Source of the DNA: Obrimoposthia wandeli
Lineage: Eukaryota
Assembly: GCA_977020255.1 (NCBI GenBank)
Contig: CDROCS010003176.1
Span: 62,001 to 126,000 of the forward strand
DNA length: 64,000 bases
Direction of reading: 5' to 3'
Part shown: in pieces, positions 35,989 through 51,769 of the stretch
How positions within the stretch are numbered: position 1 is the stretch's first letter
How the letters are laid out: every line of letters begins with the position of its first letter
Position numbers and translations under genes: made by a program
Notes under the pieces: generated by a model
What the model saw: the letters and a program-made list of their open reading frames with translations, nothing else
What the model was told of the DNA's origin: nothing
The model's database searches: none

Positions 35989-36570
35989 TTAAAAACCTTC
36001 AACCCCTTTCATTTCTGGTAAATGGTGCGCAATACCTTTATGACAATCTATGCACGTTTTACTACCATCGGCGAGCGCCGTTGAATGTTGCTTTGAAGCA
36101 CGCATTGATTGGCGAGTAAAATCCATATAGACAAATTCATGGCAATTACGACACTCTAATGAATCGTTCTTTTTCATCCGAGTCCATTCTCGTTCAGCCA
36201 TTTCACGCCGCCGAGCTTCGAATTTTTCAGGGGTCGATATTGCTCCAGTAAGCCAAGCGAACACTTCTTTAGAAGCCTGCATCTTACGCGCCATTTTATC
36301 GGTCCAATCATGCGGTACATGGCAATCAGAACAAATAGCACGAACACCGGTACGGTTCGTAAAGTGAATCGTACTTTGTATTTCTTGGTACACATCATTT
36401 TGATGACAACTGGCACAGAACTTTTCTGTATTGGTTAATTCCATTCCCGTATTAAATGCCCCCCAAAAAACGATCCCTGCAATAAATCCGCCTAACGTTA
36501 AAAAGCCAAGGCTAAAATACTTAGGGGGGGTTCTAATAACGCTCCACCACTTTTTAATCCACTTCCACAT
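35989..36570 (-). CDS. napC: NapC tetrahaem cytochrome c
   Basis: N-terminal TM helix; four CxxCH motifs (CASCH, CSDCH, CRNCH, CIDCH). Confidence 0.96.
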   Translation of the reverse strand: MWKWIKKWWSVIRTPPKYFSLGFLTLGGFIAGIVFWGAFNTGMELTNTEKFCASCHQNDVYQEIQSTIHFTNRTGVRAICSDCHVPHDWTDKMARKMQASKEVFAWLTGAISTPEKFEARRREMAEREWTRMKKNDSLECRNCHEFVYMDFTRQSMRASKQHSTALADGSKTCIDCHKGIAHHLPEMKGVEGF

Positions 36571-36583
36571 ACTGGTTTCTCCC

Positions 36584-37045
36584 TCACTGCTCTTGACCGA
36601 TTAACGAGTCAAGATCGGTAAAATCAGTATCCACCAGCAATTTGGCATCTGATTGCGTTACATGGCACTGTTGGCAAAAATAACGTCTAGGAGACAGTTC
36701 AGCCAAAAAATTACCATCACGATCCATGAAATGGGTCACGCTGATCATGGTGGCTTGCGTTTCTGCCACGCGACTTCTTGCATGGCAAGACATGCATTTA
36801 TTCGCCTTTATATCGACCTGATAATTATCGATTTTATGAGGGATAAGTGGAGGCTGCATAGGGTAGCTACGCGCAGGTATTATATCTGTATTGAGCGTTT
36901 TGCTCATGGGTGGCGGAGTTGGTTCTTGGTTTAGCGGTGCTTTTCTGAGTGTCGCTAAATCAGAATCAACGGTTGCGGCTACGCTTACCGTTATTCCTAC
37001 AATCGCTACCGCCGAGAATAAAATCGCCGACATTAATCGTTTCAT
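36584..37045 (-). CDS. napB: NapB dihaem cytochrome c
   Basis: Signal peptide; QPPLIPH, CMSCH and RRYFCQQCH. Confidence 0.96.
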   Translation of the reverse strand: MKRLMSAILFSAVAIVGITVSVAATVDSDLATLRKAPLNQEPTPPPMSKTLNTDIIPARSYPMQPPLIPHKIDNYQVDIKANKCMSCHARSRVAETQATMISVTHFMDRDGNFLAELSPRRYFCQQCHVTQSDAKLLVDTDFTDLDSLIGQEQ

Positions 37046-37057
37046 CGTTATTCCTCC

Positions 37058-39550
37058 TTATGCCTTCACAATCTTAACTGCACATTTCTTGAAGTCAGTT
37101 TGCTTAGACAACGGATCGGTTGCATCCAGTGTCACCTTGTTAATGAGTTGACTAGCATCAAACCATGGAACAAAAACCAAACCTATTGGCGGCTTATTTC
37201 TACCTCGCGTTTCTACCCGTGTAATAATCTCACCACGGCGAGAGACCACTTTTACTTCGTCACCACGGCGTAAACCTCGCGATTTTGCATCGTCAGGGTG
37301 CATAAATACTTGTGCATCGGGGTATGCTTTAAACAATTCAGGCACCCGTTGAGTCATTGAACCTGAATGCCAATGCTCAATAACCCTACCGGTACTTAAC
37401 CACATGTCATATTCTTCATCTGGACTTTCTGCCGGCGGCTCATACGGTAATGCGAAGATAATCGCCTTACCATCTGGTTTACCGTAAAACTCAAAACCAG
37501 CCCCTTCTTTCACATAAGGATCTGAGCCTTCGCGATAACGCCATAAGGTTTCTTTACCATCAACCACCGGCCAACGTAGACCACGTGTTTCGTGATACAT
37601 ATCGAAGGGGGCTAAATCGTGCCCATGCCCACGACCAAACTCGGCATATTCTTCAAATAAACCTTTTTGAACATAGAAACCATAATAGTTAGCTTCATCG
37701 TTCAACTTTCCTTCAGCAAGATCGCTAAGCGGGTATTTATTTACGTTGCCGTTGATATACAGAACATCGAATAATGTTTTGCCTTTGTAATCTGGGTTGG
37801 CATCAAGTAATTCTTTTGGCCAAACCTCATCGGTTGTAAAGCGCTTTGAAAACTCCATTAGCTGCCAAAGATCTGATTCTGATTCTCCTGGTGCTTCCAC
37901 CATTTGGTGCCAAAGTTGGGTTCTTCGCTCAGCATTACCGTACCCACCTTCTTTTTCTACCCACATTGATGTTGGTAAAACTAAATCAGCAGCTTGTGAT
38001 GTTACGGTTGGATAAGCTTCTGAAACCACAATAAAATTGTCTGGATTACGGTAACCCGGCAATGTTTCTTCATTTATGTTGGCACCTGCTTGCAGGTTAT
38101 TATTCACTTGGATCCAATACGCATTGATCTTACCGTCTTTCAACATTCGAGATTGCAATACCGCATGCGCCCCCACCTTGCCGGGTATTGTGCCATCAGG
38201 TAGTTTCCAAATTTTTTCTGCCGTTTTACGGTGTTCAGGATTAGTAACCACTAAATCAGCGGGTAATCGATGAGCAAAAGTACCGACTTCACGTGCTGTA
38301 CCACAGGCTGATGGCTGGCCTGTTAGAGAGAATGGGCTGTTACCCGGGGTAGATATCTTCCCCGTTAATAGGTGAATGTTATAAATCAAATTATTACACC
38401 ATACTCCGCGAGTATGTTGATTGAACCCCATGGTCCAGAACGAGGTAACTTTGATCTCTGGATTTGCATAAAGTTCGGCAAGTTCAATCAATTTCTCTTG
38501 TTTTACACCAGACATTTCACTGGCTTTTTCAACCGTATATTCCGACACGAACTCTTTGAACTCTTCAAATGTCATTGGTGTTGAATCACCGCTATCTGGA
38601 TTCTTAGCCGCTTGCTGTAGTGGGTTTTCAGGGCGTAGTCCATAACCAATGTCGGTTGCTCCACGTCTAAAGTTTACATGCTTAGAGGTGAAGTCTTTAT
38701 TAACCTTGTCGTTAGTAATAATGTAATTAGCAATAAAATTCAAAATGGCTAAATCAGATTGGGGAGTAAATATAATAGGAAGATCAGCCAGCTCAAAACT
38801 GCGATGTTCAAACGTAGATAACACTGCCACTTTCACATCTGGTACAGATAAACGACGATCTGTTACTCGTGTCCACAATATGGGGTGCATTTCTGCCATA
38901 TTAGAACCCCATAAAACAAACGCATCGGCTGCTTCTATATCATCGTAACAGCCCATAGGTTCATCAATACCAAAGGTCCGAATAAAACCAACAACCGCTG
39001 ATGCCATACAGTGCCTAGCATTCGGTTCAAGGTTATTTGAACGAAAGCCAGCTTTCATTAGTTTAGAAGCCGCGTAGCCTTCATAAATCGTCCACTGACC
39101 AGAACCAAACATGCCTATTGCTTCTGGCCCTTTTTCTTTTAATGTTTTCTTCCACTTCTCAGCCATGATATCAAACGCTTGATCCCAGCTGATTGGGGAG
39201 AATTCACCATTTTTATCATACTTGCCATCAGTCATTCTCAACAGTGGCTGTGTTAGGCGATCTTGCCCATACATGATTTTTGATAAAAAATAGCCTTTTA
39301 CGCAATTCAATCCACGATTAACAGGAGATTTAATGTCGCCATGTGTGGCAACCACTTTACCTTCTTTGGTGCCGACGTTTACCGAACAACCTGTTCCACA
39401 AAAACGACAAGGTGCTTTTTCCCATGTTAGCTTCGTCATTGAAGCATCAGTAACAACATTACTAGCACTTATCGGTATCGATATGCCTGCCGCAGCAGCT
39501 GCCGAGGCAACAGCCTGTGCTTTAATAAACTTCCGTCGAGAAACTTTCAT
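37058..39550 (-). CDS. napA: Periplasmic nitrate reductase catalytic subunit
   Basis: Tat signal SRRKFIK; CRFCGTGC...C [4Fe-4S] motif; NARHCMASA; [13 protein letters not shown]. Confidence 0.98.
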
Positions 39551-40423: not shown

Positions 40424-41506
40424 TTGGAATTACTATCAATTGATTTTCTTGGCCAGCCTTTACGAATTGAAGGTTCTATGGCTGGTTGGCAACAGCTGTT
40501 TTGGAACAATACTTTAGTTTCACAGCTTAATGCAAATACCAACCATAACGATAAGCACCTGCATGAATTTGAACTGACTAATGGCGATAGCGTCATTAAA
40601 TGCAGTGTAGAAGTGAACCTTAGCTGGCAACCTTTTTTAGTTGAATACAAAGCCACAGCCAATGATCAGCTCGTTGTCGATGGCTCGCGTAATGAGAAAG
40701 ACATTGAGCAACAAAAACCGCAAGCTACCCCAAAAGCAGAGCGCCGTTTCAGCTTAATTGGCCTTGCATCATTGGGCATGAAAGCACTGAAAAGTGCGAA
40801 ATTGATTAAAGTCGTATTAGCATCGGCCAGCCTTGCCGCTTATTCATGGTTATTTTCAATTCAGTTCGCCTTAGCATTACTGGCTTGCTTAGTGTTTCAC
40901 GAGTACGGTCATATTCGTGCGATGAAGTTCTTTGGTATGAAAACAAAAGGCATTTACTTAATCCCGTTTTTTGGTGGTTTGGCATTAAGTGATGAAAAAA
41001 TTAACACCCGTTGGCAAGATGTTGTTATCTCCATTATGGGGCCGCTATTTGGCCTAATCATGTCAGTTGTTTGCGTGATTGCCTATTGGGTAACCGATAA
41101 CATGTTCTTTGCTGGGCTTGCTGTTTTCAATGCCCTATTAAACTTATTCAACCTGCTACCTATTCTGCCTTTAGATGGTGGGCATGTACTTAAAAGCATC
41201 AGTTTTTCGATGAACAGTAAAGTGGGTATCGCGTTATGCCTATCTGCTGCGATTGGTGGTGTGGTATTAAGCTATACATTAGGTTTAACGTTATTCGGTT
41301 TCTTATTAATTATGGGCTGTGTAGAAATTCTATTTGAATGGAAGCATCGCCATCACAGCCATTTATTACCCTTAGATCGCTATGGTCAAATTTTCTCGTT
41401 TGCTTGGTATGTCGGCTTAGTGAGTTCACTTATCGGCATAATATGGTACTTCGCGAGCACAGGTGATGAGCTACTACGTTTACCAATGCAGATCTTAGGG
41501 ACTTAA
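40424..41506 (+). CDS. Site-2 protease (M50) family membrane metalloprotease
   Basis: HEYGH zinc motif, FNLLPILPLDGG and multiple TM helices. Confidence 0.92.
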   Translation: MELLSIDFLGQPLRIEGSMAGWQQLFWNNTLVSQLNANTNHNDKHLHEFELTNGDSVIKCSVEVNLSWQPFLVEYKATANDQLVVDGSRNEKDIEQQKPQATPKAERRFSLIGLASLGMKALKSAKLIKVVLASASLAAYSWLFSIQFALALLACLVFHEYGHIRAMKFFGMKTKGIYLIPFFGGLALSDEKINTRWQDVVISIMGPLFGLIMSVVCVIAYWVTDNMFFAGLAVFNALLNLFNLLPILPLDGGHVLKSISFSMNSKVGIALCLSAAIGGVVLSYTLGLTLFGFLLIMGCVEILFEWKHRHHSHLLPLDRYGQIFSFAWYVGLVSSLIGIIWYFASTGDELLRLPMQILGT

Positions 41507-41572
41507 GCCTAAAGCTGGATTGAAGCAATACTTAGCGGCTGAGCGACAAAATCAAAATACTTTAAAATGCCT

Positions 41573-41611
41573 AAAAAAAGAGCGGTGCTTGTAATAAGCC
41601 CCGCTCTTTTT
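41573..41611. terminator. Bidirectional terminator
   Basis: AAAAAGAGCGG...CCGCTCTTTTT. Confidence 0.8.
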
Positions 41612-41661
41612 GTCTTTACAGCTAATAACGAATGTTTAATCACTCGCTATCATGCCTAAAT

Positions 41662-42015
41662 TTATTTTTTCTTGTTCATCATTGCTTTTAAATCAGCAAA
41701 TGGATTAAACGTCGCAGCTTGGTGATCATCTTCACCCGCAACAATAACACTGCCACTTTGTTGATCGTGTTCAGTGTATTTTTCATGTTCATGATCGTGA
41801 CAGAAAAGACACAATAATTCCCAGTTACTACCGTCTTGAGGATTATTGGTATGATCATGATCCATGTGGTGAACGGTTAGTTCACGCAAGTTAGAATAAA
41901 CAAATTCACGAGAACAACGTCCACATACCCAAGGGTAAATTTTTAGCGCTTTTTCTCGGTAACCTTGCTCTTGACGAGCATAGCTGGCACTTGTGCCATA
42001 ATGATCAGACGACAT
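41662..42015 (-). CDS. yajD: YajD-family HNH nuclease
   Basis: YREKALKIYPWVCGRC...TVHHMDHDH.NN...NWELLCLFCHDHEH. Confidence 0.9.
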   Translation of the reverse strand: MSSDHYGTSASYARQEQGYREKALKIYPWVCGRCSREFVYSNLRELTVHHMDHDHTNNPQDGSNWELLCLFCHDHEHEKYTEHDQQSGSVIVAGEDDHQAATFNPFADLKAMMNKKK

Positions 42016-42325
42016 ATCTCAACCTGTTATTTCTTTAATCAACTCTATTTAGCATAAATACAAATCACTGTTTTTAGCAATACTCATCAAAACAGCACCC
42101 GAAATGCATTCATACTAACCAGTAATATCCCCATTGAAACACTGACACGGGTAGTAGTGCAATACAGAAGTCACAAGGATCTAGCGATAGTCACAGACAC
42201 AAGTAAAAATACGATGTTCAATGATGAAAAAATCACCCATATTTCATCTAAAAATGAATAATCACCACGTATATCTATTGGCTTTTTATTGGGTTTAGAA
42301 GTCTAACAAAATCAACATCAAGCTA

Positions 42326-42455
42326 TGACATAGTTATGTCAATCTCGTGATTGGTTGTAAAATAGACTAAGACACCGATTCTTATTAGTTTTGGGACAAA
42401 AATTGCTGTTCGATTAGATGTAATGCAATGCTGTTATGGTATTATTTGTCCCAAA
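42326..42455 (+). promoter_or_regulatory. Promoter region of the DUF2760-Hsp70 operon: palindrome, extended -10 element and inverted repeat
   Basis: TGACATA-GT-TATGTCA (42326-42341); TG-G-TATTAT (42437-42445); TTTGGGACAAA (42390-42400) / TTTGTCCCAAA (42445-42455). Confidence 0.5.
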
Positions 42456-42500
42456 TTGTTCATAGTGAATCGATTTTTCACTGTTAAGAGTAAACGAATT

Positions 42501-43172
42501 ATGGCTTTTGATTTTTCTAGTATGACTGTTGATCTGTCAACGATGCCAACCACGATTGACTTAGGTCATGCTTGGTTAGGCGGTTTAGTTTTGGTTTTAT
42601 TGGTGCTGTATATTGCTAAAAAAGGCAAGCCAGTAGAAGTGGAAAAGATTGTTGAAAAGCAAGTCGAAGTAGAGAAAATCGTAGAGGTTGAAAAACCTGT
42701 CGAAAAGATTGTTGAGAAGATCGTCGAAATCCCAGTAGAAAAAATCGTTGAAGTTGAGAAGATTGTTGAAGTTGAACCAAAACTAAAAACATCAACACCT
42801 GATGCTGCACTTCAACTGCTTTCACTGCTTCAACAAGAAGCTCGCTTTATTGATTTTATGCAAGAAGACCTAAAAGGCTTCACCGATGCAGAAATCGGAG
42901 CTGCTGCCCGTGTTATTCACGAAGGCGGTCATAAAGTACTAAACGAATACTTTAGTTTTGCCCCAATCCGTTCAGAAGACGAAGAGAGCCGTATCTCACT
43001 ACCTGCTGGCTTCAATGCATCAGAAGTACGCCTTACAGGTAACGTTGTTGGCGAAGCTCCATTTAATGGCACCCTAATACACCGTGGTTGGAAAGTGACT
43101 AATGTTAAACTGCCTAAACTAGCAGAAGGTCACGATGTACGTATCGTAGCAGCCGCTGAGGTAGAATTATAA
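42501..43172 (+). CDS. DUF2760-family protein with an N-terminal TM helix and EKIVE repeats
   Basis: ALQLLSLLQQEARFIDF...IGAAARVIH...GTLIHRGW; stop overlaps the next ATG (TAATG). Confidence 0.85.
   Translation: MAFDFSSMTVDLSTMPTTIDLGHAWLGGLVLVLLVLYIAKKGKPVEVEKIVEKQVEVEKIVEVEKPVEKIVEKIVEIPVEKIVEVEKIVEVEPKLKTSTPDAALQLLSLLQQEARFIDFMQEDLKGFTDAEIGAAARVIHEGGHKVLNEYFSFAPIRSEDEESRISLPAGFNASEVRLTGNVVGEAPFNGTLIHRGWKVTNVKLPKLAEGHDVRIVAAAEVEL
42630..42779 (+). repeat. Coding low-complexity repeat, 50 aa with six EKIVE units
   Basis: PVEVEKIVEKQVEVEKIVEVEKPVEKIVEKIVEIPVEKIVEVEKIVEVEP, synonymous codons vary between units. Confidence 0.95.
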
Positions 43173-45007
43173 TGCAAGAGAATCAAGAACATCAATTTAG
43201 CGTTGGTATCGACTTAGGTACCACGCACTGCGTATTGTCTTATGTTGATTTGCACGATGAAGATGCAAGCGTTCAAGTTATGCCTATTCCTCAGCTAACC
43301 ACACCAGGTAATGTTGAAGAAAAAGATCAACTTGCTTCATTTATGTACCAAGCACACGAATCTGAGCTTGCACCGGGTGATACTTCATTGCCTTGGAATA
43401 GCCAGCCGAAAGCAATTGTCGGTGCAATGGCGCGTACGCTAGGCAGCAAAACCCCTATTCGCTTAATCTCTAGTGCTAAAAGCTGGCTTTGCCACGGTGG
43501 TGTAAACCGTCGCGATGCATTTTTGCCGCTGAATAGCCCAGAAGAAGTATCAAAAATATCTCCTGTTGATGCAACCTGTGCATACTTATCACACTTGGCA
43601 GATGCGTGGAATAACCAACACCCTGACACACCACTGTGTGATCAAGATGTCACTATTACAGTGCCTGCATCTTTTGACCCGGCAGCACGTGATTTAACGG
43701 CTGATGCTGCCCGTAGTATTGGTCTTAAACACCTTACATTGCTTGAAGAACCTCAAGCTGCGGTATACAGCTGGATCAAGAACAACGATGCTACATGGCG
43801 TGACCAAGTAAACGTTGGTGATATTATTCTTGTTGTCGATATTGGTGGCGGTACAACTGACCTTTCATTAGTTGCTGTAACTGAAGAAGATGGAAACCTG
43901 ACACTTAACCGTGTTGCTGTTGGTGACCATATCTTACTTGGTGGCGACAACATGGATCTTGCACTGGCTTACCGTTTAAAGATGAAGCTGGCTCAAGAGG
44001 GTAAACAACTACAACCCTGGCAAGTACAGGCTATTACTCATGCTTGTCGTGATGCTAAAGAGGCATTGTTAAGCGATGCTGAATTAAGTACTGTACCCAT
44101 TGTTGTACCTAGCCGCGGTTCTAAACTGCTTGGCGGCACACTTCAAACTGAGCTAACGCAAGAAGAAGTACAACAAACATTGGTTGAAGGCTTCTTCCCT
44201 CGCACTGGCGTAGAAGAGCACCCAGTACAAACGGCACGTGCTGCACTAACACAAATGGGCCTACCATATGCACAAGATGCAACGGTTACTCGCCATGTAG
44301 CGCACTTCTTAAGCCGTCAGTCTGCTGCGGTTGATGACTTATTCGAAAAATACGACCAACTACACGACGGTTTTATTCGCCCGACTGCGATTCTATTCAA
44401 CGGTGGTGTACTTAAATCATCACTGATTTCAGAACGCCTACTCTCTATCATGAATAACTGGCTAACAACCGCTGGCAGTGAAGAAGCAAAATTACTTGAA
44501 GGCTTAGATCTTGATCTAGCGGTTGCAAGTGGTGCGTCTTACTATGGTTCAGTTCGTAAAGGCCAAGGTGTACGTATTCGTGGTGGTATCGCAAGTAGCT
44601 ACTATGTGGGTATCGAAAGCTCTATGCCGGCAATTCCGGGGATGGAACCACCACTAGAAGCATTGTGTGTGGCACCGTTTGGTATGGAAGAAGGCTCTCA
44701 TGCTGAAATACCTAGTCAAGAATTCGGACTTGTTATTGGTCAGCCAGTACAATTTAAATTCTTTGGTTCAACCGTTCGTCGTGAAGACCCAGCAGGTACT
44801 CACCTAGATTGGTGGCAGCCTGAAGAACTAGAAGAGCTACCGGCGATTCAGGTAACACTGCCCGTTTCTGACGGTCGTAGTGTAGGTGAAATTGTTCCCG
44901 TACGCTTAGCCTCTCGTGTAACAGAATTAGGTACGCTTTGCTTAGAAGCAATTCCAAGCGATGGCGGCCAGAAATGGCAAGTTGAATTCGACGTTCGCGA
45001 AGCTTAA
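43172..45007 (+). CDS. Divergent Hsp70-family ATPase A
   Basis: VGIDLGTTH, TITVPASFD, LLEEPQAA, VDIGGGTTD, LLGGDNMD and LFNGG. Confidence 0.92.
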   Translation: MQENQEHQFSVGIDLGTTHCVLSYVDLHDEDASVQVMPIPQLTTPGNVEEKDQLASFMYQAHESELAPGDTSLPWNSQPKAIVGAMARTLGSKTPIRLISSAKSWLCHGGVNRRDAFLPLNSPEEVSKISPVDATCAYLSHLADAWNNQHPDTPLCDQDVTITVPASFDPAARDLTADAARSIGLKHLTLLEEPQAAVYSWIKNNDATWRDQVNVGDIILVVDIGGGTTDLSLVAVTEEDGNLTLNRVAVGDHILLGGDNMDLALAYRLKMKLAQEGKQLQPWQVQAITHACRDAKEALLSDAELSTVPIVVPSRGSKLLGGTLQTELTQEEVQQTLVEGFFPRTGVEEHPVQTARAALTQMGLPYAQDATVTRHVAHFLSRQSAAVDDLFEKYDQLHDGFIRPTAILFNGGVLKSSLISERLLSIMNNWLTTAGSEEAKLLEGLDLDLAVASGASYYGSVRKGQGVRIRGGIASSYYVGIESSMPAIPGMEPPLEALCVAPFGMEEGSHAEIPSQEFGLVIGQPVQFKFFGSTVRREDPAGTHLDWWQPEELEELPAIQVTLPVSDGRSVGEIVPVRLASRVTELGTLCLEAIPSDGGQKWQVEFDVREA

Positions 45008-45018
45008 AACCCTACACA

Positions 45019-45044
45019 TACGGCGCATCACACGATGCGCCGTA
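45019..45044 (+). terminator. Strong hairpin between the two Hsp70 genes
   Basis: TACGGCGCATC-ACAC-GATGCGCCGTA followed by ATTTT. Confidence 0.55.
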
Positions 45045-45227
45045 ATTTTAGGTCTCTCTATAATACCATTCGATGCGAAGTTCTAATTTTAATAGAGAAT
45101 GGTATTAAACCAGCTGTCCTATAACCCAACTGCCCTATAACAAAGTATCTCCTGAACATTCTCATTGCTTATTTCAATTTCATCACTCTATTGTGCAATG
45201 ATCTCAGGACTGACTCTGGAGCAAAAA

Positions 45228-48206
45228 ATGTCTTCACCCTCTTCACCTCGCTTTCTTGTCGGTATCGATTTAGGTACGACACACACGGTTGTTGCTTACT
45301 CGCCCATTCCCCAAGATTCTGATCCGCATTCATCAGATCACGTGCAAGATAAAACGGCATTTCTTGCCGAAAAAACGCAGCAACTTGAATCAAGTCCGAT
45401 ACAAATATTTGAAATTGATCAACTAATTGCCCCCGGTGAAGTGGCCCGTAAAGCCTTATTGCCATCTTTTCGTTATCACCCTGCATCAGGGGAGATGAAT
45501 GAAGCTGAACTCGTTCTACCTTGGGATATTCAGCCTGTCGAAGGTGAAGTCAACAACGCCATTATTGGCGAATTCGCGCGCGATCTAGGTGCAAAAGTTG
45601 AAGGTCGCCAAGTTGTTAGTGCTAAAAGTTGGCTATCACACACGGGTGTTGATCGCAGTGAAGCCATTCTTCCTTGGTCTTCAAGCCGTCAATCGTCTAT
45701 TGCTTCAACGGGCGACGTTGCAAAGGTTTCACCTGTTGTTGCCAGTGCCAGTTATTTAAACCATGTGCGCCAAGCGTGGGATTATCACCACCCTGACAGC
45801 AAATTATGCCATCAAGAAGTGGTGATCACTGTTCCTGCATCTTTTGATGAAGGTGCGCGCGCATTAACTATCGACGCTGCGGCCATGGCTGGCTTACCCA
45901 ATGTACTGTTATTAGAAGAGCCACAAGCTGTTTGTTACGATTGGTATGCTCAAAATAAAGAGAACGCTGAAACACTGCTTCAAGACATACCATTATTAAT
46001 GGTATGTGATGTGGGTGGTGGTACAACCGACCTGAGTTTAATCAAAGTTGGTACTGAAAAAGGTAAATTATCCCTTAACCGTATCGGCGTAGGTGATCAC
46101 CTAATGCTAGGGGGGGATAACCTTGATTTAGCCCTTGCCCATAAAGCAGAAGAACGCTTACATGGTGGCGCTAAAAAATTAAGTGCAGCAGGTTTATCAA
46201 AACTTATTCAGCAAACGCGAAAAGTAAAAGAACAACTGTTGTCTGGCAATGCGCCAGATACGGCAAAAGTCACGCTATTGGGTAGTGGTTCACGTTTAAT
46301 CGGCGGAGCCAAAACAATCGAGCTAACGCGACAAGAAGTGCACGACATTGCTCTAAATGGTTTCTTTCCTGAAACGGAATTTGATGACCAACCCAGTCAT
46401 CGACAAGCCGCTGTTGTCGAATTTGGTTTACCGTATGCGGCCGATCCAGCCATTAGCAAACACCTTGCTCAATTCATTGGTCTTCACGACAGTGTTTGCC
46501 GCGATGCATTACTGACGCATAACCAACATGCTGAAACAAAAATCGACATCATCGATGGTCAGCCAATTATTCCATCAGCAGTGTTGTTAAACGGTGGCGT
46601 ATTCAATAGCCCATTATTAACCAACCGAGTGCTTGATATTTTCTCACATTGGCGTAGTGACAGTGTCACCGAGCTAAGTAACCCCCACCCTGATTTGGCC
46701 GTTGCTTATGGTGCCGTTGCGTATGCAAAAGCACGACATGGTGCACAATTAAAAATTGGTGGTGGCTCAGCCCGTTCTTTCTTCTTAATGTTAGGGGATA
46801 AAAAGAAAAACCAACAAGGCATTTGTTTACTGCCCAAAGGTACTGAAGAAGGCACTGAAGTTCGCTTAACCCAACGTAAATTTGCCTTAACGCTTGGCGA
46901 ACCTGTTCGTTTCAACCTTATTTCATCAACTGATGATAGCCAGATTGAAGCGGGTGGGTTATTAACAATAGATGAAGAAAACGACGAAGGTAGTTATGTT
47001 GATCTTCCACCGTTTATTGCAACGTTAATCAGTGAACGAGATCGCTCAAAATTAGCGGCTAATCAAAAAGATCGAGAAGAAGTGACGCTAGCTTGCCAAC
47101 TTACAGAAGTCGGTACGCTACAAATTGAATGTGTTAGCGTGACCGATGAAAGCAAGCGCTGGAAAGTCGAATTCGCGATTCGTAAAAATTTAGCGCGTCT
47201 TAATCGAGATAAAGATAATTCAACACTTGCTGAGCAATTATTGCCTAATCGTATCGATGAAGCAAAATCTGCCATTAAACTCGTTTATGGCGGCAGTAAA
47301 AATACAAACATCCAAGCAATAAACAGCGGTAAAGCAATTAAAACGCTACGTAACGACCTCGAAAAAATGATTGGTAAGCGTGATAACTGGGACGTACCTT
47401 GTCTACGAGAATTAGCTGATACCTTAATCGACAGTCGTAAACGTCGACGTCGTTCTGATATTCATGAGCGTAATTGGTTGAAGCTGACAGGTTTCACTTT
47501 GCGTCCTGGTTTTGGCTACCCAGCAGATGAATTCCGCATGGAACAAGTCTGGGCATTGTATCAACATGGTGTGCAATTTGATTCCAATACGCAAACTTGG
47601 AGTGATTGGTGGACATTCTGGCGTCGTATCGCTGGTGGGCTAACCCAAGATCAGCAACTTGTTATTTTTAAAGATATCGCTAAATACATTAGTCCGAATG
47701 CAACACGTAACAGTAAACTAAGCAAAGAAATGCAAGAACGCAGTTACGAAGACATGGTACGTTTAGCGGCATCTCTTGAGCATCTACCGTTCGAAAACAA
47801 GCTACAGCTAATCGAATCATTATTTGGACGCTTACAAAAACCACAGTACTCGCAAGCACATTGGTGGGCTCTTGGGCGTATTGGTACACGTAGCCCTTTT
47901 TATGGTAGTACGCATAATTTGTTATCGTCTGAACATATTTCATACTGTTTACCAGAACTCATGGAGTTTGATTGGCGCAAAGATCCTAACATTGGGTTTG
48001 CAGCAGTAATGATGAGCCGAATGACTGGCGACCGTACGCTCGATATTAATGACGAAAATAGAACCAAAGTCATTAACAAATTGAAAGCAAGTAAAGCGCC
48101 TGAAAGTTGGATTCAAATGGTATCAGAGGTCAAAGTATTAACAGAAGCAGAAACTAAACGCGTTTTCGGTGATGCGCTACCAACAGGATTAAGGCTCATC
48201 GGTTAA
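45228..48206 (+). CDS. Divergent Hsp70-family ATPase B with a long C-terminal extension (DUF3731-like)
   Basis: GGAG RBS; VGIDLGTTH, VITVPASFD, LLEEPQA, DVGGGTTD and MLGGDNLD; Trp-rich C-terminal domain (GFTLRPGFGYP, WWTFWRRIAGG, WWALGRIG). Confidence 0.9.
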   Translation: MSSPSSPRFLVGIDLGTTHTVVAYSPIPQDSDPHSSDHVQDKTAFLAEKTQQLESSPIQIFEIDQLIAPGEVARKALLPSFRYHPASGEMNEAELVLPWDIQPVEGEVNNAIIGEFARDLGAKVEGRQVVSAKSWLSHTGVDRSEAILPWSSSRQSSIASTGDVAKVSPVVASASYLNHVRQAWDYHHPDSKLCHQEVVITVPASFDEGARALTIDAAAMAGLPNVLLLEEPQAVCYDWYAQNKENAETLLQDIPLLMVCDVGGGTTDLSLIKVGTEKGKLSLNRIGVGDHLMLGGDNLDLALAHKAEERLHGGAKKLSAAGLSKLIQQTRKVKEQLLSGNAPDTAKVTLLGSGSRLIGGAKTIELTRQEVHDIALNGFFPETEFDDQPSHRQAAVVEFGLPYAADPAISKHLAQFIGLHDSVCRDALLTHNQHAETKIDIIDGQPIIPSAVLLNGGVFNSPLLTNRVLDIFSHWRSDSVTELSNPHPDLAVAYGAVAYAKARHGAQLKIGGGSARSFFLMLGDKKKNQQGICLLPKGTEEGTEVRLTQRKFALTLGEPVRFNLISSTDDSQIEAGGLLTIDEENDEGSYVDLPPFIATLISERDRSKLAANQKDREEVTLACQLTEVGTLQIECVSVTDESKRWKVEFAIRKNLARLNRDKDNSTLAEQLLPNRIDEAKSAIKLVYGGSKNTNIQAINSGKAIKTLRNDLEKMIGKRDNWDVPCLRELADTLIDSRKRRRRSDIHERNWLKLTGFTLRPGFGYPADEFRMEQVWALYQHGVQFDSNTQTWSDWWTFWRRIAGGLTQDQQLVIFKDIAKYISPNATRNSKLSKEMQERSYEDMVRLAASLEHLPFENKLQLIESLFGRLQKPQYSQAHWWALGRIGTRSPFYGSTHNLLSSEHISYCLPELMEFDWRKDPNIGFAAVMMSRMTGDRTLDINDENRTKVINKLKASKAPESWIQMVSEVKVLTEAETKRVFGDALPTGLRLIG

Positions 48207-48318
48207 GCTTTCGTTAGGGTAAATGTTGTTATCATAAGCTCATATAAATCATTTTTACCAAATTCAATAGGTAGTAAGCCTATTGGATCTGAGTTTAGAG
48301 AAAATAGTGAGTAGAGTT

Positions 48319-48522
48319 ATGACACATTCCCAATTTAAGTTAATTGCTCAACGTATCTTTAAATCTGAAGAGCAACGTTCTGCCGTTGCAGCAGTAATCT
48401 TTGATGGATTATCAAGCTATGAAGCAGAGAAACGTTTTGAACTTCCGAAAGGCACTTTGTCTCGTAATGTGCGTAAGTACAAAAGTGAAGTTCATTACAT
48501 AACGAACGTTGCTGCAGCTTAA
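48319..48522 (+). CDS. Small HTH-like protein
   Basis: MTHSQFKLIA...GLSSYEAEKRFELPKGTLSRNVRKY, HTH-like pattern. Confidence 0.7.
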   Translation: MTHSQFKLIAQRIFKSEEQRSAVAAVIFDGLSSYEAEKRFELPKGTLSRNVRKYKSEVHYITNVAAA

Positions 48523-48538
48523 ACGTCGAATTGAGTTT

Positions 48539-48569
48539 AAAAAAACGGAGAGCTTATGCTCTCCGTTTT
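48539..48569. terminator. Bidirectional terminator
   Basis: AAAACGGAGAGC-TTAT-GCTCTCCGTTTT. Confidence 0.85.
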
Positions 48570-48604
48570 CTATTTCATGACAATAGCGAGTAGGTATTCG
48601 CCCA

Positions 48605-49465
48605 TTAACTATTCATGCCGAGCTTTCTAGCAAAGTCATCTGACGAACGTAGCTTCGCACACATCCAAAAGAGTGCGATACTAGCCGCTAATAAAGCAAT
48701 TAGTGTCACAGTACCCAAGCTAAAGAAGACAGAAACCGGGCTATCACTGGTTAGAATCTTAAAAGGCAGATTGTAAATTTTGCTAATCCAATCCCCTACT
48801 ACGCTGCTACCAAATACCATATAAGCCATTAATTTAATCATAACGACCGCAACAAATAAGGTCACTAACGGGTGATTAGTGATTTGCGATAAAACCATCA
48901 ACAAACAAGCAACGGGCAATAATGCTAGGCTAACTAATACCATGCGTCCTAGAAAATCAAACCAATGCATAATCAAACTAGCAAAACTGATTGATGATGT
49001 CGTCAGCATATCAGCAGGCATAAACCAACTCGCTAGCACCCAAACAATGACATCAGAAAACAGTAATAATACCGATGCAACTAAAGGAATAACCACTAAT
49101 GCAAAAATCAATTTCACTGCTATCGCAAGGTTGTCTGACACTGGCATTGAACGCCAAAACATCAAGCTTCCTTCTTGGCGTTCTTTACGCAGTGTTTTCG
49201 GTACATAAGAAAAGAAAGTAATTGTTGCGACAATACCAGCCACAATAATATTCAATTTACCTATAATGCCCGCATAACCCGTCACATTAGAAAAGCCCGC
49301 CCACTCATCCATTCCAGATATTTGATAGCTGATATTTAAATTATCACCGCCACTCATCACAAGCATAAAATTAACAACGGCGAAAATAGCTAAAAACAAA
49401 GGTAAACGAGTAACCAATTTATGCTCTAAGAATTCTTTCTCAAGCATATAAAAAACAGGGCTCAT
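48605..49465 (-). CDS. ABC-2 type permease
   Basis: About 6 TM helices; ERQEGSLMFWRSMPVS; overlaps the ATPase stop codon. Confidence 0.85.
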   Translation of the reverse strand: MSPVFYMLEKEFLEHKLVTRLPLFLAIFAVVNFMLVMSGGDNLNISYQISGMDEWAGFSNVTGYAGIIGKLNIIVAGIVATITFFSYVPKTLRKERQEGSLMFWRSMPVSDNLAIAVKLIFALVVIPLVASVLLLFSDVIVWVLASWFMPADMLTTSSISFASLIMHWFDFLGRMVLVSLALLPVACLLMVLSQITNHPLVTLFVAVVMIKLMAYMVFGSSVVGDWISKIYNLPFKILTSDSPVSVFFSLGTVTLIALLAASIALFWMCAKLRSSDDFARKLGMNS

Positions 49466-51373: not shown

Positions 51374-51769
51374 TCATTTAGATTCAGAAGTTAACGATAA
51401 ATTATTCATTATATCATCTTCTGAAACGATGTCATTTCCCATTAACTCTTCAGGGTGAACACCATCTTTTTCCATTAATGCCAATATTTCATTCATACGA
51501 GCAAGACGGGCTTCTTCTTTAAACTCATGTAATACAGCAATAAGGTTATTGATCTTATGGAGAGGCATACGTTTAATTACAGCTTTCTGACGACCTGGTA
51601 CTTCATCAGCAAAATCAGTTAGCGCTTGGCGATAATCAAAACGCTCTTCACTTTTAACTGGTTTTTGTGGTTCTTTAATAATAGTGCTTGAATCAACAAC
51701 AGTTGTGCCAGATTCAACACCTTTTAACATTGCACTCAGCGCTTTTTCTGCAGCTGCAAAACTATCCAT
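51374..51769 (-). CDS. H-NS-like oligomerisation-domain protein lacking the DNA-binding domain
   Basis: GAGG RBS; [21 protein letters not shown]...[16 protein letters not shown] resembles the H-NS N-terminal domain (MLIADGIDPNELL). Confidence 0.6.
   Translation of the reverse strand: [131 protein letters not shown]

What the first reader, a model, noticed from the sequence alone, without database searches (positions are those of the whole stretch)
42501..48206. Uncharacterised operon: membrane-anchored DUF2760 protein plus two non-canonical Hsp70 ATPases
Seen: three co-oriented genes; the first is translationally coupled to the second (TAATG). Both Hsp70s keep the actin-fold phosphate motifs but share the same deviations from DnaK: DLGTTH for DLGTTN, EEPQA for NEPTA, GGGTTD for GGGTFD, GGDN(M/L)D for GGEDFD and NGG for VGG. 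Neither has a recognisable DnaK peptide-binding domain with its lid, and the second carries a roughly 330-aa Trp-rich extension. Established: DnaK, HscA, HscC and YegD do not have this layout. Inference: a dedicated hetero-oligomeric Hsp70-fold machine tethered to the inner membrane, acting as a specialised chaperone or remodeller, a stress/defence sensor or a cytoskeleton-like system. I know of no assigned function. This is the best candidate in the window for an undescribed system.
Basis: partly seen in the sequence, partly recalled or inferred. Interest (0 to 1): 0.85.

Follow-up and report, generated by a model that had tools for sequence, protein, structure and literature searches.

The report
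Membrane-tethered two-Hsp70 operon, function unknown
This Photobacterium operon encodes a membrane-anchored DUF2760 protein and two divergent Hsp70-type ATPases; the trio is conserved in hundreds of proteobacterial and myxobacterial species, has no published function, and looks like a specialised chaperone machine working at the inner membrane.

Summary
Three co-oriented genes lie at 42501-48206: g1 (DUF2760, one TM helix), g2 (611-aa Hsp70-like) and g3 (992-aa Hsp70-like with C-terminal DUF3731). g1 and g2 overlap by TAATG.

- g2 and g3 are separated by 220 nt holding a strong hairpin that is conserved in Photobacterium.
- DLGTTH is typical of g2 but not of g3 orthologues.
- An AF2 model shows a beta-sandwich where DnaK has its SBD-beta. 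Sequence profiles cannot confirm it.

The trio keeps its gene order in Vibrionaceae, other Gammaproteobacteria, Burkholderia, a Bradyrhizobium conjugative plasmid and Myxococcota-like contigs. The invariant core is g1+g2, translationally coupled in 69 of 71 loci. g2 and g3 come from one old duplication, are very distant from DnaK, and both keep the catalytic residues.

The g1 model's best PDB matches are all GrpE, but weakly, and sequence tests were negative.

Best reading: a self-contained Hsp70 module tethered to the membrane by a co-chaperone-like anchor, clients unknown. The searchable literature assigns no function; the probable V. cholerae orthologues VC1373-1375 appear only in expression screens, and HapR activates the VC1375 promoter. 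I class it as a new variant of a known kind, of moderately high interest.

The parts
42336..42363 (+). Weak sigma-70-like promoter candidate upstream of g1
   Evidence: 9 of 12 consensus matches. The region holds fewer such sites than shuffled sequence, so this is a candidate only.
42501..43172 (+). g1: membrane-anchored DUF2760 protein (223 aa)
   Evidence: Pfam PF10816, E 6e-54. Orthologue precedes g2 in every fetched locus that has both genes.
42501..42560 (+). g1 N-terminal tail, with the conserved motif M-x-x-D-L-x-x-x-P-T-T-x-D-M/L-x-H; predicted periplasmic
   Evidence: Alignment A2: P16 and D20 are invariant. The tail is acidic and K/R residues follow the TM helix, so the positive-inside rule gives N-out, C-in (inference).
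42561..42620 (+). g1 transmembrane helix (residues about 21-40)
   Evidence: AF2 helix 21-40 with pLDDT 88-89. Maximum 19-aa Kyte-Doolittle score 2.1.
42621..42797 (+). g1 low-complexity linker with (V/I)EK(I/V)VE repeats
   Evidence: pLDDT below 50. The linker is repetitive in Vibrionaceae and P/A/E-rich elsewhere, with variable length. There is no DNA-level tandem repeat.
42798..43169 (+). g1 DUF2760 domain: two long helices followed by a seven-stranded beta domain
   Evidence: AF2 pLDDT 77-90. The six best Foldseek PDB hits are all GrpE but weak: E 0.12, TM 0.24-0.29.
43172..45007 (+). g2: lid-less Hsp70-like ATPase (611 aa). NBD about residues 1-467; beta domain about 468-609 (nt 44573-44998)
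   Evidence: It is 37% identical to g3 over its whole length and ends right after the beta domain. It is the most conserved of the three, at 44-63% identity to alpha-, betaproteobacterial and myxobacterial-type copies.
45019..45050 (+). Conserved terminator-like hairpin (11-bp G+C-rich stem, then a short T run) between g2 and g3
   Evidence: RNA fold -23.9 kcal/mol, z -7.3. The stem is invariant in five Photobacterium species while the flanking spacer diverges or is missing.
45228..48206 (+). g3: Hsp70-like ATPase with C-terminal DUF3731 (992 aa)
   Evidence: AF2 mean pLDDT 82, pTM 0.67.
45228..46742 (+). g3 nucleotide-binding domain (residues 1 to about 505, with insertions relative to DnaK)
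   Evidence: Pfam and NCBIfam Hsp70 hits. K70, E171, D194, T199, D201 and K270 (DnaK numbering) are invariant.
46755..47183 (+). g3 beta-sandwich domain (residues about 510-652), in the position of DnaK SBD-beta
   Evidence: AF2 predicts nine strands between residues 517 and 649. Foldseek alignments run over whole two-domain Hsp70 chains, TMt up to 0.74. Sequence profiles are not significant.
47253..48197 (+). g3 all-alpha, Trp/Arg-rich domain (DUF3731; residues about 676-990) in place of the Hsp70 helical lid
   Evidence: Pfam PF12531. AF2 predicts about 17 helices. Invariant motifs are S-x-x-H-E, RPGFG, W-x-x-W-W-x-x-W-R-R and GDR. No PDB sequence relative.
48542..48569 (+). Terminator-like hairpin after g3, shared with the convergent downstream gene
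   Evidence: 12-bp stem flanked by A and T runs on both sides.

Best explanation
The locus encodes a self-contained, specialised Hsp70-type chaperone module that works at the cytoplasmic face of the inner membrane.

- g1 is a single-pass membrane protein (N-out, C-in). Its cytoplasmic DUF2760 domain hangs on a flexible linker and acts as the dedicated partner of g2, as a tether and probably a co-chaperone. One candidate role is a GrpE-like nucleotide-exchange factor.
- g2 is an ATP-hydrolysing Hsp70 with an NBD and a beta-sandwich client-binding domain but no helical lid.
- g3 is its paralogue, in which a large Trp/Arg-rich alpha-helical domain (DUF3731) replaces the lid. It probably pairs with g2, as Hsp110 pairs with Hsp70 or Ssz1 works beside Ssb, to regulate g2 or to select clients.

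Shown here: gene content, order and coupling; wide co-inheritance; intact catalytic residues; predicted topology and domain layout.

Inferred: physical interactions, co-chaperone activity of g1, the g2-g3 heterodimer and client binding. The clients are unknown.
For: (1) The trio keeps the same order in Gammaproteobacteria, Betaproteobacteria, an alphaproteobacterial plasmid and Myxococcota-like contigs.
(2) g1 and g2 overlap by 1 or 4 nt in 69 of 71 loci. They stay together even where g3 is distant or absent.
(3) The ML tree gives a g2 clade (97/92) and a g3 group with parallel branching orders. Both are separated from DnaK by a 100/100 branch. This indicates one old duplication followed by co-inheritance.
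(4) K70, E171, D194, T199, D201 and K270 (DnaK numbering) are invariant in both paralogues.
(5) In the g3 AF2 model (pLDDT 82), all 50 best PDB matches are two-domain Hsp70s in ATP-like docked states. NBD-only entries do not appear. TMt reaches 0.74 against lid-less BiP.
(6) g1 has a TM helix followed by K/R residues and a disordered linker.
(7) The six best PDB matches of the g1 model are all GrpE, from four organisms. grpE directly precedes dnaK in two of the records fetched here, Acinetobacter and Monoglobus.
(8) g2 is 44-63% identical across proteobacterial classes and Myxococcota-like copies, a constraint typical of core machinery.
Against: - No interaction, ATPase, exchange or client data exist.
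- SBD-beta homology is not detectable by profiles (110 of 150 shuffles scored at least as well).
- GrpE-likeness rests on weak Foldseek scores only (E 0.12, TM below 0.3). Those scores came from a whole-chain query that included the disordered linker.
- Three sequence tests for GrpE failed: Pfam gave no GrpE hit; the HMM search against PDB gave none; hhalign against a 13-sequence GrpE profile gave E 0.2-0.35, with 46 of 150 column shuffles at least as good.
- No J-domain protein is encoded in the unit.
- Only about 40% of DUF2760 proteins have a clear TM helix. The others carry an aromatic, Arg-containing segment, so membrane anchoring is not proven family-wide.
Confidence: 0.45

Rival explanations
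1. g2 and/or g3 are not autonomous chaperones. They are Hsp110-like co-chaperones (nucleotide-exchange factors or holdases) that dock NBD-to-NBD onto the cell's canonical DnaK, with g1 localising that activity to the membrane.
For: A 2026 review proposes exactly this role for NBD-containing bacterial DnaK paralogues (PMC13580251). g3's layout (NBD + beta domain + enlarged helical C-terminus) resembles Hsp110. Sse1 appears among the Foldseek hits (2qxl). No J-protein is encoded in the unit.
Against: Both paralogues keep every catalytic residue. Two paralogues plus a dedicated partner are always inherited together, which fits a closed system better than a DnaK accessory. No link to dnaK, dnaJ or grpE was seen in any of the neighbourhoods examined.
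Confidence: 0.15
2. It is a regulatory or signalling Hsp70 module, comparable to M. xanthus StkA or yeast Ssz1. It would hold or release a membrane-associated regulator and so control a lifestyle switch such as quorum-sensing or c-di-GMP outputs, rather than doing general protein quality control.
For: In V. cholerae the promoter of VC1375 is bound and directly activated by HapR in vivo and in vitro (PMC10328515). VC1375 heads the probable orthologous operon VC1375-1373. VC1373-1375 was recovered as an in-biofilm-repressed operon (PMC9201469). In Vibrio loci the divergent neighbour is a CHASE-GGDEF cyclase. A MarR regulator precedes the plasmid copy.
Against: The regulatory neighbours are clade-specific; no fourth gene is universally conserved. 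The expression data are screens without phenotypes. The VC orthology is inferred from annotation and synteny, not from sequence. The HapR site was not found in the V. metoecus locus.
Confidence: 0.15
3. It is an anti-phage or anti-plasmid conflict system in which the Hsp70-like ATPases act as sensors.
For: There is a weak PADLOC hit of both NBDs to candidate PDC-M61B (E 6e-7 and 3.5e-4). A complete copy sits on a conjugative Bradyrhizobium plasmid near a VapC toxin gene. A small HNH endonuclease gene lies just upstream in the window.
Against: The PADLOC hits cover only about 100 NBD residues. There is no effector domain (nuclease, protease, pore, NADase). The locus is syntenic and apparently core in Vibrionaceae, with single clusters seen on hundreds of V. 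parahaemolyticus contigs. g2 is conserved at 44-63% across classes, unlike fast-evolving defence genes. g1 and the DUF3731 domain have no PHROG hit; g2's PHROG hits are Hsp70/actin-fold families of unknown or partition function.
Confidence: 0.07
4. The two proteins are actin-like (MreB/ParM-type) filament formers tethered to the membrane by g1, that is, a cytoskeletal or partition system.
For: There are weak Pfam MreB_Mbl hits (24.3 and 22.1 bits). NCBIfam gives MreB and BeeR hits far below cut-off. PHROG gives a 'partition protein' hit at E 1e-4.
Against: All these hits fall below the curated thresholds and cover the shared actin-fold core only. The Hsp70-specific catalytic Lys70 and Glu171 are invariant. 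The 50 best structural matches are all Hsp70s with SBD-beta, at E 1e-17 to 1e-21.
Confidence: 0.05

Closest known systems
DnaK-GrpE(-DnaJ) chaperone system
   Same: Actin-fold NBD with all catalytic residues. A predicted beta-sandwich follows the NBD. A small partner gene sits immediately upstream of the Hsp70 gene, as grpE does before dnaK in two fetched records. The partner's predicted fold matches GrpE best, though weakly.
   Different: Scores against the DnaK models are about 53 bits versus cut-offs of 648-822. A very long branch separates the family from DnaK. There is no helical lid (g2) or a 330-aa alpha domain in its place (g3). The partner is membrane-anchored and shows no sequence similarity to GrpE. 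There is no J-protein and there are two Hsp70 paralogues.
E. coli HscC with its membrane-anchored J-proteins DjlB/DjlC (recalled from the literature, not tested here)
   Same: A specialised, non-heat-shock bacterial Hsp70 encoded beside dedicated membrane-anchored co-chaperones.
   Different: The partner here is DUF2760, not a J-domain protein. No HscC-specific model matched. The system has two paralogous Hsp70s and a DUF3731 domain.
Eukaryotic Hsp70-Hsp110/Grp170 pair and the Ssz1-Ssb (RAC) pair
   Same: Two divergent Hsp70-fold proteins work together, one with an altered or enlarged C-terminal region. Foldseek hits include Sse1 (2qxl), the Hsp110:Hsc70 complex (3c7n) and Ssz1 (6sr6, 5mb9). 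A review suggests bacterial analogues may exist (PMC13580251).
   Different: The origin is independent: g2 and g3 are each other's closest relatives. Both keep full catalytic sets. The DUF3731 domain has no detectable relative among solved structures by sequence. The heterodimer is untested.
Organellar membrane-tethered Hsp70 motors (mtHsp70 with Tim44/Mge1; BiP with Sec63/Sil1/Grp170)
   Same: The concept is shared: an Hsp70 held at a membrane by a dedicated tether or co-chaperone, with a GrpE-type or Hsp70-type exchange factor.
   Different: No translocon component is linked to the operon. Tim44 and Sec63 did not appear among the fold matches. This is an analogy only.
Myxococcus xanthus StkA (Hsp70-like regulator of exopolysaccharide)
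   Same: A non-essential, non-heat-shock bacterial Hsp70 paralogue with a regulatory phenotype (PMC4319316).
   Different: StkA is 540 aa and is followed by an SCP2-like protein and a small PhaE-like protein, not preceded by DUF2760. It is a different system.

Membership tests
Hsp70 superfamily (actin-fold NBD) | Phosphate-1, phosphate-2 and adenosine motifs, plus catalytic K70, E171, D194, T199 and D201 (DnaK numbering) | tested here: met
   Pfam PF00012 is above its gathering score for both proteins (66.6 and 58.4 bits versus 20.6). All listed residues are invariant in 5 g2 and 4 g3 sequences aligned with E. coli DnaK.
Canonical DnaK | Full-length match to the equivalog models TIGR02350 / NF001413 at their cut-offs | tested here: not met
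   Scores are 52-54 bits against cut-offs of 648-822. A 100/100 long branch separates the family from four DnaKs.
HscA | Match to TIGR01991 / NF003520 at cut-off | tested here: not met
   Best NCBIfam hits score only 85-91 bits against cut-offs of 620-708 and cover the NBD alone.
YegD | Match to NF008673 at cut-off; NBD-only architecture | tested here: not met
   About 30 bits against a cut-off of 331. Both proteins have large C-terminal domains.
HscC | HscC-specific model or signature, with DjlB/DjlC J-protein partners | not tested
   No HscC model appeared among the NCBIfam hits, and I did not confirm that such a model exists in the library. No J domain is present in the operon.
Hsp70 substrate-binding domain, beta part (SBD-beta) | Eight-stranded beta-sandwich after the interdomain linker, recognisable by sequence | tested here: not met
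   The Pfam Hsp70 match stops at residue 345. hhalign of the beta-domain profile against E. coli DnaK SBD and against a 6-sequence DnaK SBD profile is not significant; 110 of 150 shuffles scored at least as well.
Hsp70 substrate-binding domain, beta part (SBD-beta) | The same fold in the same position, judged by structure | tested here: inconclusive
   AF2 predicts a nine-strand domain at residues 517-649. All 50 best Foldseek hits are chains of at least 493 residues containing NBD + SBD-beta, with TMt up to 0.74 and alignments of 660-890 columns. A domain-only superposition could not be run.
Hsp70 helical lid (SBD-alpha) | Helical bundle after SBD-beta | tested here: not met
   g2 ends 2-10 residues after the last beta strand in all orthologues aligned. 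g3 has the unrelated 330-aa DUF3731 domain instead.
GrpE nucleotide-exchange factor (for g1) | Sequence match to PF01025 or a GrpE profile | tested here: not met
   No GrpE hit in Pfam even at E 10, for the window protein and 20 distant members. No GrpE in the HMM search against PDB sequences. hhalign against a 13-sequence GrpE profile gave E 0.23-0.35, with 46 of 150 column shuffles at least as good.
GrpE nucleotide-exchange factor (for g1) | GrpE fold: long paired helices followed by a small beta domain | tested here: inconclusive
   The six best of 350,542 PDB chains are GrpE from Thermus, Geobacillus, E. coli and human mitochondria. The scores are weak: E 0.12-1.5, probability up to 0.75, TM 0.14-0.29. 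The query included the TM helix and the disordered linker.
GrpE nucleotide-exchange factor (for g1) | Accelerates ADP release from its Hsp70; forms a homodimer | not testable with these tools
   This needs biochemistry or multimer modelling.
J-domain co-chaperone | J domain with an HPD loop | tested here: not met
   No DnaJ-family Pfam hit in g1, g2 or g3.
Known or candidate anti-phage defence systems (PADLOC-DB 2.0) | Significant full-length match of the components to a system model | tested here: not met
   The only hit is a roughly 100-residue NBD match to PDC-M61B (26.5 and 17.4 bits). g1 has none.
MreB/ParM actin-like filament proteins | Pfam PF06723 at its gathering score | tested here: not met
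   24.3 and 22.1 bits against a cut-off of 27.

The most novel reading that the evidence does not exclude
DUF2760 is a structurally GrpE-like exchange factor that has become membrane-anchored. With the lid-less Hsp70 (g2) and the Hsp110-like paralogue (g3), it would form a bacterial counterpart of the organellar membrane-tethered Hsp70 motors. This ATP-driven machine would pull, extract or hand over polypeptides at the cytoplasmic face of the inner membrane, independently of DnaK/DnaJ/GrpE.
Probability: 0.15. Interest if true: 0.85.

Novelty: new variant of a known kind. Interest (0 to 1): 0.62.

Why it matters
Hsp70 research has long asked what the many divergent bacterial DnaK paralogues do; a 2026 review still lists them as functionally unknown.

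This trio is a clean, widely conserved and genetically tractable case. It is present in V. cholerae (probably VC1373-1375), V. parahaemolyticus, Photobacterium and Burkholderia cenocepacia. It has a fixed partner protein, two catalytically intact paralogues and a membrane address.

Showing that DUF2760 is a new class of Hsp70 co-chaperone would extend the Hsp70 paradigm in bacteria. So would showing that two bacterial Hsp70s work as an obligate pair at the membrane. Either result would assign function to two Pfam DUFs found in thousands of genomes.

Tried and rejected
- Literature searches for DUF2760, DUF3731, PF10816 and PF12531 found nothing. 'DnaK-related protein' gave only table entries. 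VC1373-1375 gave expression screens only, and several 'VC1374' hits were a strain name. Searches for atypical or non-canonical Hsp70 found no paper on this system.
- I suspected M. xanthus StkA was the same system. Its operon is different, so I rejected this.
- Sequence searches of g1, of distant DUF2760 members and of the DUF3731 domain against PDB sequences gave no meaningful hit.
- Profile-profile tests of DUF2760 against GrpE, and of the beta domain against DnaK SBD, with shuffle controls, were not significant.
- I considered the invariant C-terminal ...PAEVEL of g1 as an EEVD-like tail. Distant members carry 1-2 extra residues after it, so it is more likely the last beta strand of the domain.
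- PADLOC and PHROGs gave no support for a defence or phage origin.
- Rfam found nothing in 41500-48800.
- There is no DNA tandem repeat under the VEK protein repeat.
- The published HapR site was not found upstream of the V. metoecus orthologue.
Domain-only fold searches therefore could not be run for DUF2760 (residues 100-223), the beta domain or DUF3731.

Full report
WHAT IS THERE

Between 42501 and 48206 on the + strand lie three genes.
- g1 (42501-43172, 223 aa) is a DUF2760 protein (PF10816, E 6e-54, residues 100-222).
- g2 (43172-45007, 611 aa) matches the Pfam Hsp70 model only over residues 11-345 (66 bits).
- g3 (45228-48206, 992 aa) matches Hsp70 weakly (58 bits) and carries PF12531/DUF3731 at residues 743-990 (E 1e-104).

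The g1 stop and g2 start overlap as TAATG. The g3 start at 45228 has a conserved GGAG 8 nt upstream.

The organism is a Photobacterium of the profundum/frigidiphilum group, at 97% identity. The flanks look like ordinary chromosome. napABC, an M50 peptidase and a small HNH endonuclease lie upstream. A convergent ABC-ATPase/GntR unit lies downstream.

All quoted motifs are present in the window. Across 71 g2 and 75 g3 orthologues, EEPQA, GGGTTD and GGDN[MLIV]D are family signatures. DLGTTH holds for 66/71 g2 but only 23/75 g3; the canonical N is commoner in g3. The g3 extension has 11 Trp in 332 residues.

g2 and g3 are paralogues, 37% identical over the whole length of g2. The extra part of g3 is therefore only the C-terminal 330 aa.

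NCBIfam scores against the DnaK, HscA and YegD models are 30-91 bits against cut-offs of 331-822. The statement that they belong to none of these subfamilies holds.

CONSERVATION

In the fetched loci that have enough upstream DNA, g1-g2-g3 occur in that order. The exception is one Oleiphilaceae MAG in which g3 stands alone.

g1 and g2 overlap by 1 or 4 nt in 69 of 71 loci. The g2-g3 spacer has a median of 71 nt, ranging from an overlap to 486 nt. No fourth gene is universally linked.

Outside the Gammaproteobacteria, the same trio is found in:
- Burkholderia, Caballeronia and a Comamonadaceae replicon;
- a 110-kb conjugative plasmid of Bradyrhizobium barranii, preceded there by a MarR gene;
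- Myxococcota-type contigs.

In some of the latter, g3 is 7 kb away or not in the neighbourhood while g1-g2 remain coupled. The invariant core is therefore g1+g2.

DUF2760 has 1,775 clusters at 50% identity in a 1.8-billion-protein library.

An ML tree puts all g2 in one clade (97/92). All g3 fall in a second group; only the long-branched plasmid copy is unresolved. The branching orders are parallel, and both groups are separated from DnaK by a very long 100/100 branch. This indicates one old duplication, followed by co-inheritance.

g2 is the slowest-evolving partner, at 44-63% identity to the alpha-, beta- and myxo-type copies.

ANATOMY OF g1

Alignment of 49 orthologues and the AF2 model give this layout:
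- a short acidic N-tail with a conserved D-L-x-x-x-P-T-T-x-D motif;
- one TM helix (residues about 21-40);
- a K/R cluster, so N-out/C-in by the positive-inside rule (inference);
- a disordered linker, made of (V/I)EK(I/V)VE repeats in Vibrionaceae and P/A/E-rich elsewhere;
- the DUF2760 domain: two long helices (100-126, 129-150) followed by seven short strands.

The most conserved residues lie on the two helices and in an H-x-G-W turn.

Among 265 diverse DUF2760 proteins, only about 40% have a clear TM segment. The rest carry a conserved aromatic, Arg-containing segment (...RLWFAW.CFFRVLF...). Its membrane association is possible but unproven.

A Foldseek search of the g1 model against 350,542 PDB chains returned GrpE as the six best hits, from Thermus, Geobacillus, E. 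coli and human mitochondria. More GrpE entries appeared lower in the list. The scores are weak (E 0.12, probability 0.75, TM 0.24-0.29), and the query included the TM helix and the disordered linker.

I tested this lead at the sequence level, and every test was negative. hhalign of 69 DUF2760 domains against 13 diverse GrpE sequences gave E 0.23-0.35, and 46 of 150 column shuffles scored as well. GrpE-likeness is therefore a structural hint, not a demonstrated relationship.

ANATOMY OF g2 AND g3

The catalytic and nucleotide-contacting residues K70, E171, D194, T199, D201 and K270 (DnaK numbering) are invariant in both paralogues across classes. Neither looks like a degenerate pseudo-ATPase.

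The g3 AF2 model is confident (pLDDT 82, pTM 0.67). It has three parts:
- an NBD with insertions (residues 1 to about 505);
- a nine-strand beta domain (517-649);
- an all-alpha domain of about 17 helices (676-980).

In Foldseek, all 50 best PDB hits (E 1e-17 to 1e-21) are Hsp70 chains that include SBD-beta. Many are in the ATP-type docked state. TMt reaches 0.73-0.74 against 520-residue lid-less BiP. None of the many NBD-only entries appears.

This indicates an SBD-beta-like sandwich in the canonical position. Profile comparisons cannot confirm it.

g2 ends directly after this domain, so it is lid-less. g3 replaces the lid with DUF3731. DUF3731 has invariant S-x-x-H-E, RPGFG, W-x-x-W-W-x-x-W-R-R and GDR motifs and no relative among solved structures by sequence.

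EXPRESSION SIGNALS

Between g2 and g3 in the window is an 11-bp G+C-rich hairpin followed by a short T run (45019-45050). It folds at -23.9 kcal/mol with z -7.3.

Its stem is invariant in five Photobacterium species while the rest of the spacer diverges. In P. chitinilyticum the spacer is reduced to the hairpin plus the ribosome-binding site. That leaves no room for a separate promoter. I read the hairpin as a leaky terminator or stabiliser that sets g3 below g1/g2 (inference).

LITERATURE

Nothing in the searchable library names DUF2760 or DUF3731.

The V. cholerae operon VC1373-1375 is annotated 'DnaK-related protein'. It is the probable orthologue by annotation, operon structure and a divergent CHASE-GGDEF neighbour in Vibrio loci. 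I did not verify this by sequence.

This operon appears only in screens:
- in-biofilm repressed (PMC9201469);
- down in a riboflavin/iron transcriptome (PMC5816637);
- lower in a vc1639 mutant (PMC5636140);
- the VC1375 promoter is bound and directly activated by HapR in vivo and in vitro (PMC10328515).

A 2026 review treats divergent bacterial DnaK paralogues as functionally open and proposes Hsp110-like co-chaperone roles (PMC13580251). M. xanthus StkA is a different system.

INTERPRETATION

The best-supported reading (confidence about 0.45) is a closed, specialised Hsp70 module at the inner membrane.
- g1 is the membrane tether and dedicated partner of g2, possibly a GrpE-like exchange factor.
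- g2 is a lid-less Hsp70.
- g3 is a paralogue whose alpha-domain replaces the lid. It probably pairs with g2 in the manner of Hsp110 with Hsp70.

The clients are unknown.

Rivals are:
- an accessory role for canonical DnaK (0.15);
- a regulatory Hsp70 tied to quorum sensing or c-di-GMP (0.15);
- a defence system (0.07);
- an actin-like filament system (0.05).

The defence and cytoskeleton readings are disfavoured by several results. PADLOC and MreB matches are only sub-threshold. There is no effector domain. The locus has core-like synteny in Vibrionaceae. g2 is strongly conserved. The structural matches are specific to Hsp70.

NOVELTY

The genes and their Pfam DUFs are in the databases, so their existence is not new. 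I did not find the following described anywhere:
- the operon-level picture;
- the wide co-inheritance;
- the intact catalytic sets;
- the SBD-beta-like domain;
- the lid replacement;
- the membrane-anchored partner with a possible GrpE-like fold.

I classify it as a new variant of a known kind, an Hsp70 chaperone system with a non-canonical architecture. Its interest is moderately high because it is testable in model Vibrio species.

Noticed in passing
window 45019-45050: The strong hairpin plus short T run between g2 and g3 has a stem that is invariant in five Photobacterium species while the surrounding spacer diverges or is deleted. It is probably a leaky terminator or stabiliser that tunes g3 dosage.
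   Followed up: partly
window 42621-42797 (g1 residues 41-99): The g1 linker is a protein-level (V/I)EK(I/V)VE repeat in Vibrionaceae, with no DNA tandem repeat. In other lineages it is a non-repetitive P/A/E-rich stretch of variable length. It resembles the extended spacers of TonB/TolA-type proteins.
   Followed up: partly
P0121-P0389 (DUF2760 proteins); alignment A4: DUF2760 proteins have two kinds of N-terminus. One is a classical TM helix, as in the window. The other is a conserved aromatic, Arg-containing segment (...RLWFAW.CFFRVLF...), common in Myxococcota-type members. It could be an in-plane membrane helix or an Hsp70-binding pseudo-substrate.
   Followed up: partly
L092 5075-10924 (Bradyrhizobium barranii plasmid pCC829_3): A complete MarR-DUF2760-Hsp70-Hsp70/DUF3731 unit sits as cargo on a 110-kb conjugative plasmid, between trb and tra genes and near a topoisomerase and a VapC toxin gene. 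The module is therefore horizontally mobile.
   Followed up: partly
L078 7175-12618 (Vibrio sonorensis): In this locus both g2 (91 + 560 aa) and g3 (863 + 71 aa) are split into two ORFs. This suggests frameshifts, either pseudogenisation or sequencing error.
   Followed up: no
L067 7989-10859 (Oleiphilaceae MAG); L085 and L087: g3 can occur without g1-g2 beside it (L067). g1-g2 can occur with g3 7 kb away (L085) or with no g3 within 9 kb (L087). The trio is thus not strictly obligatory as a contiguous unit.
   Followed up: partly
window 41662-42015 (- strand) and 40424-41506 (+): A stand-alone 117-aa HNH endonuclease gene and an M50-family membrane peptidase gene lie just upstream of the operon. 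Among the 80 fetched loci, an orthologue of the HNH ORF is found only in about 10, including the closest relative.
   Followed up: no
window 35989-39550 (- strand): This is a napA-napB-napC periplasmic nitrate reductase cluster (molybdopterin subunit, NapB, and a NapC/NirT tetrahaem cytochrome). It is ordinary respiratory content.
   Followed up: no
window 51374-51769 (- strand): A 131-aa ORF has a weak, sub-threshold match to the H-NS N-terminal domain. It lies in a stretch of lower G+C (35-37%).
   Followed up: no
Vibrio loci, e.g. L024 3654-4961 and L013 3616-5133: In Vibrio species the gene divergent from g1 is a CHASE-GGDEF diguanylate cyclase, followed by an RNase T-like exonuclease. This synteny is absent from the Photobacterium window.
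   Followed up: partly
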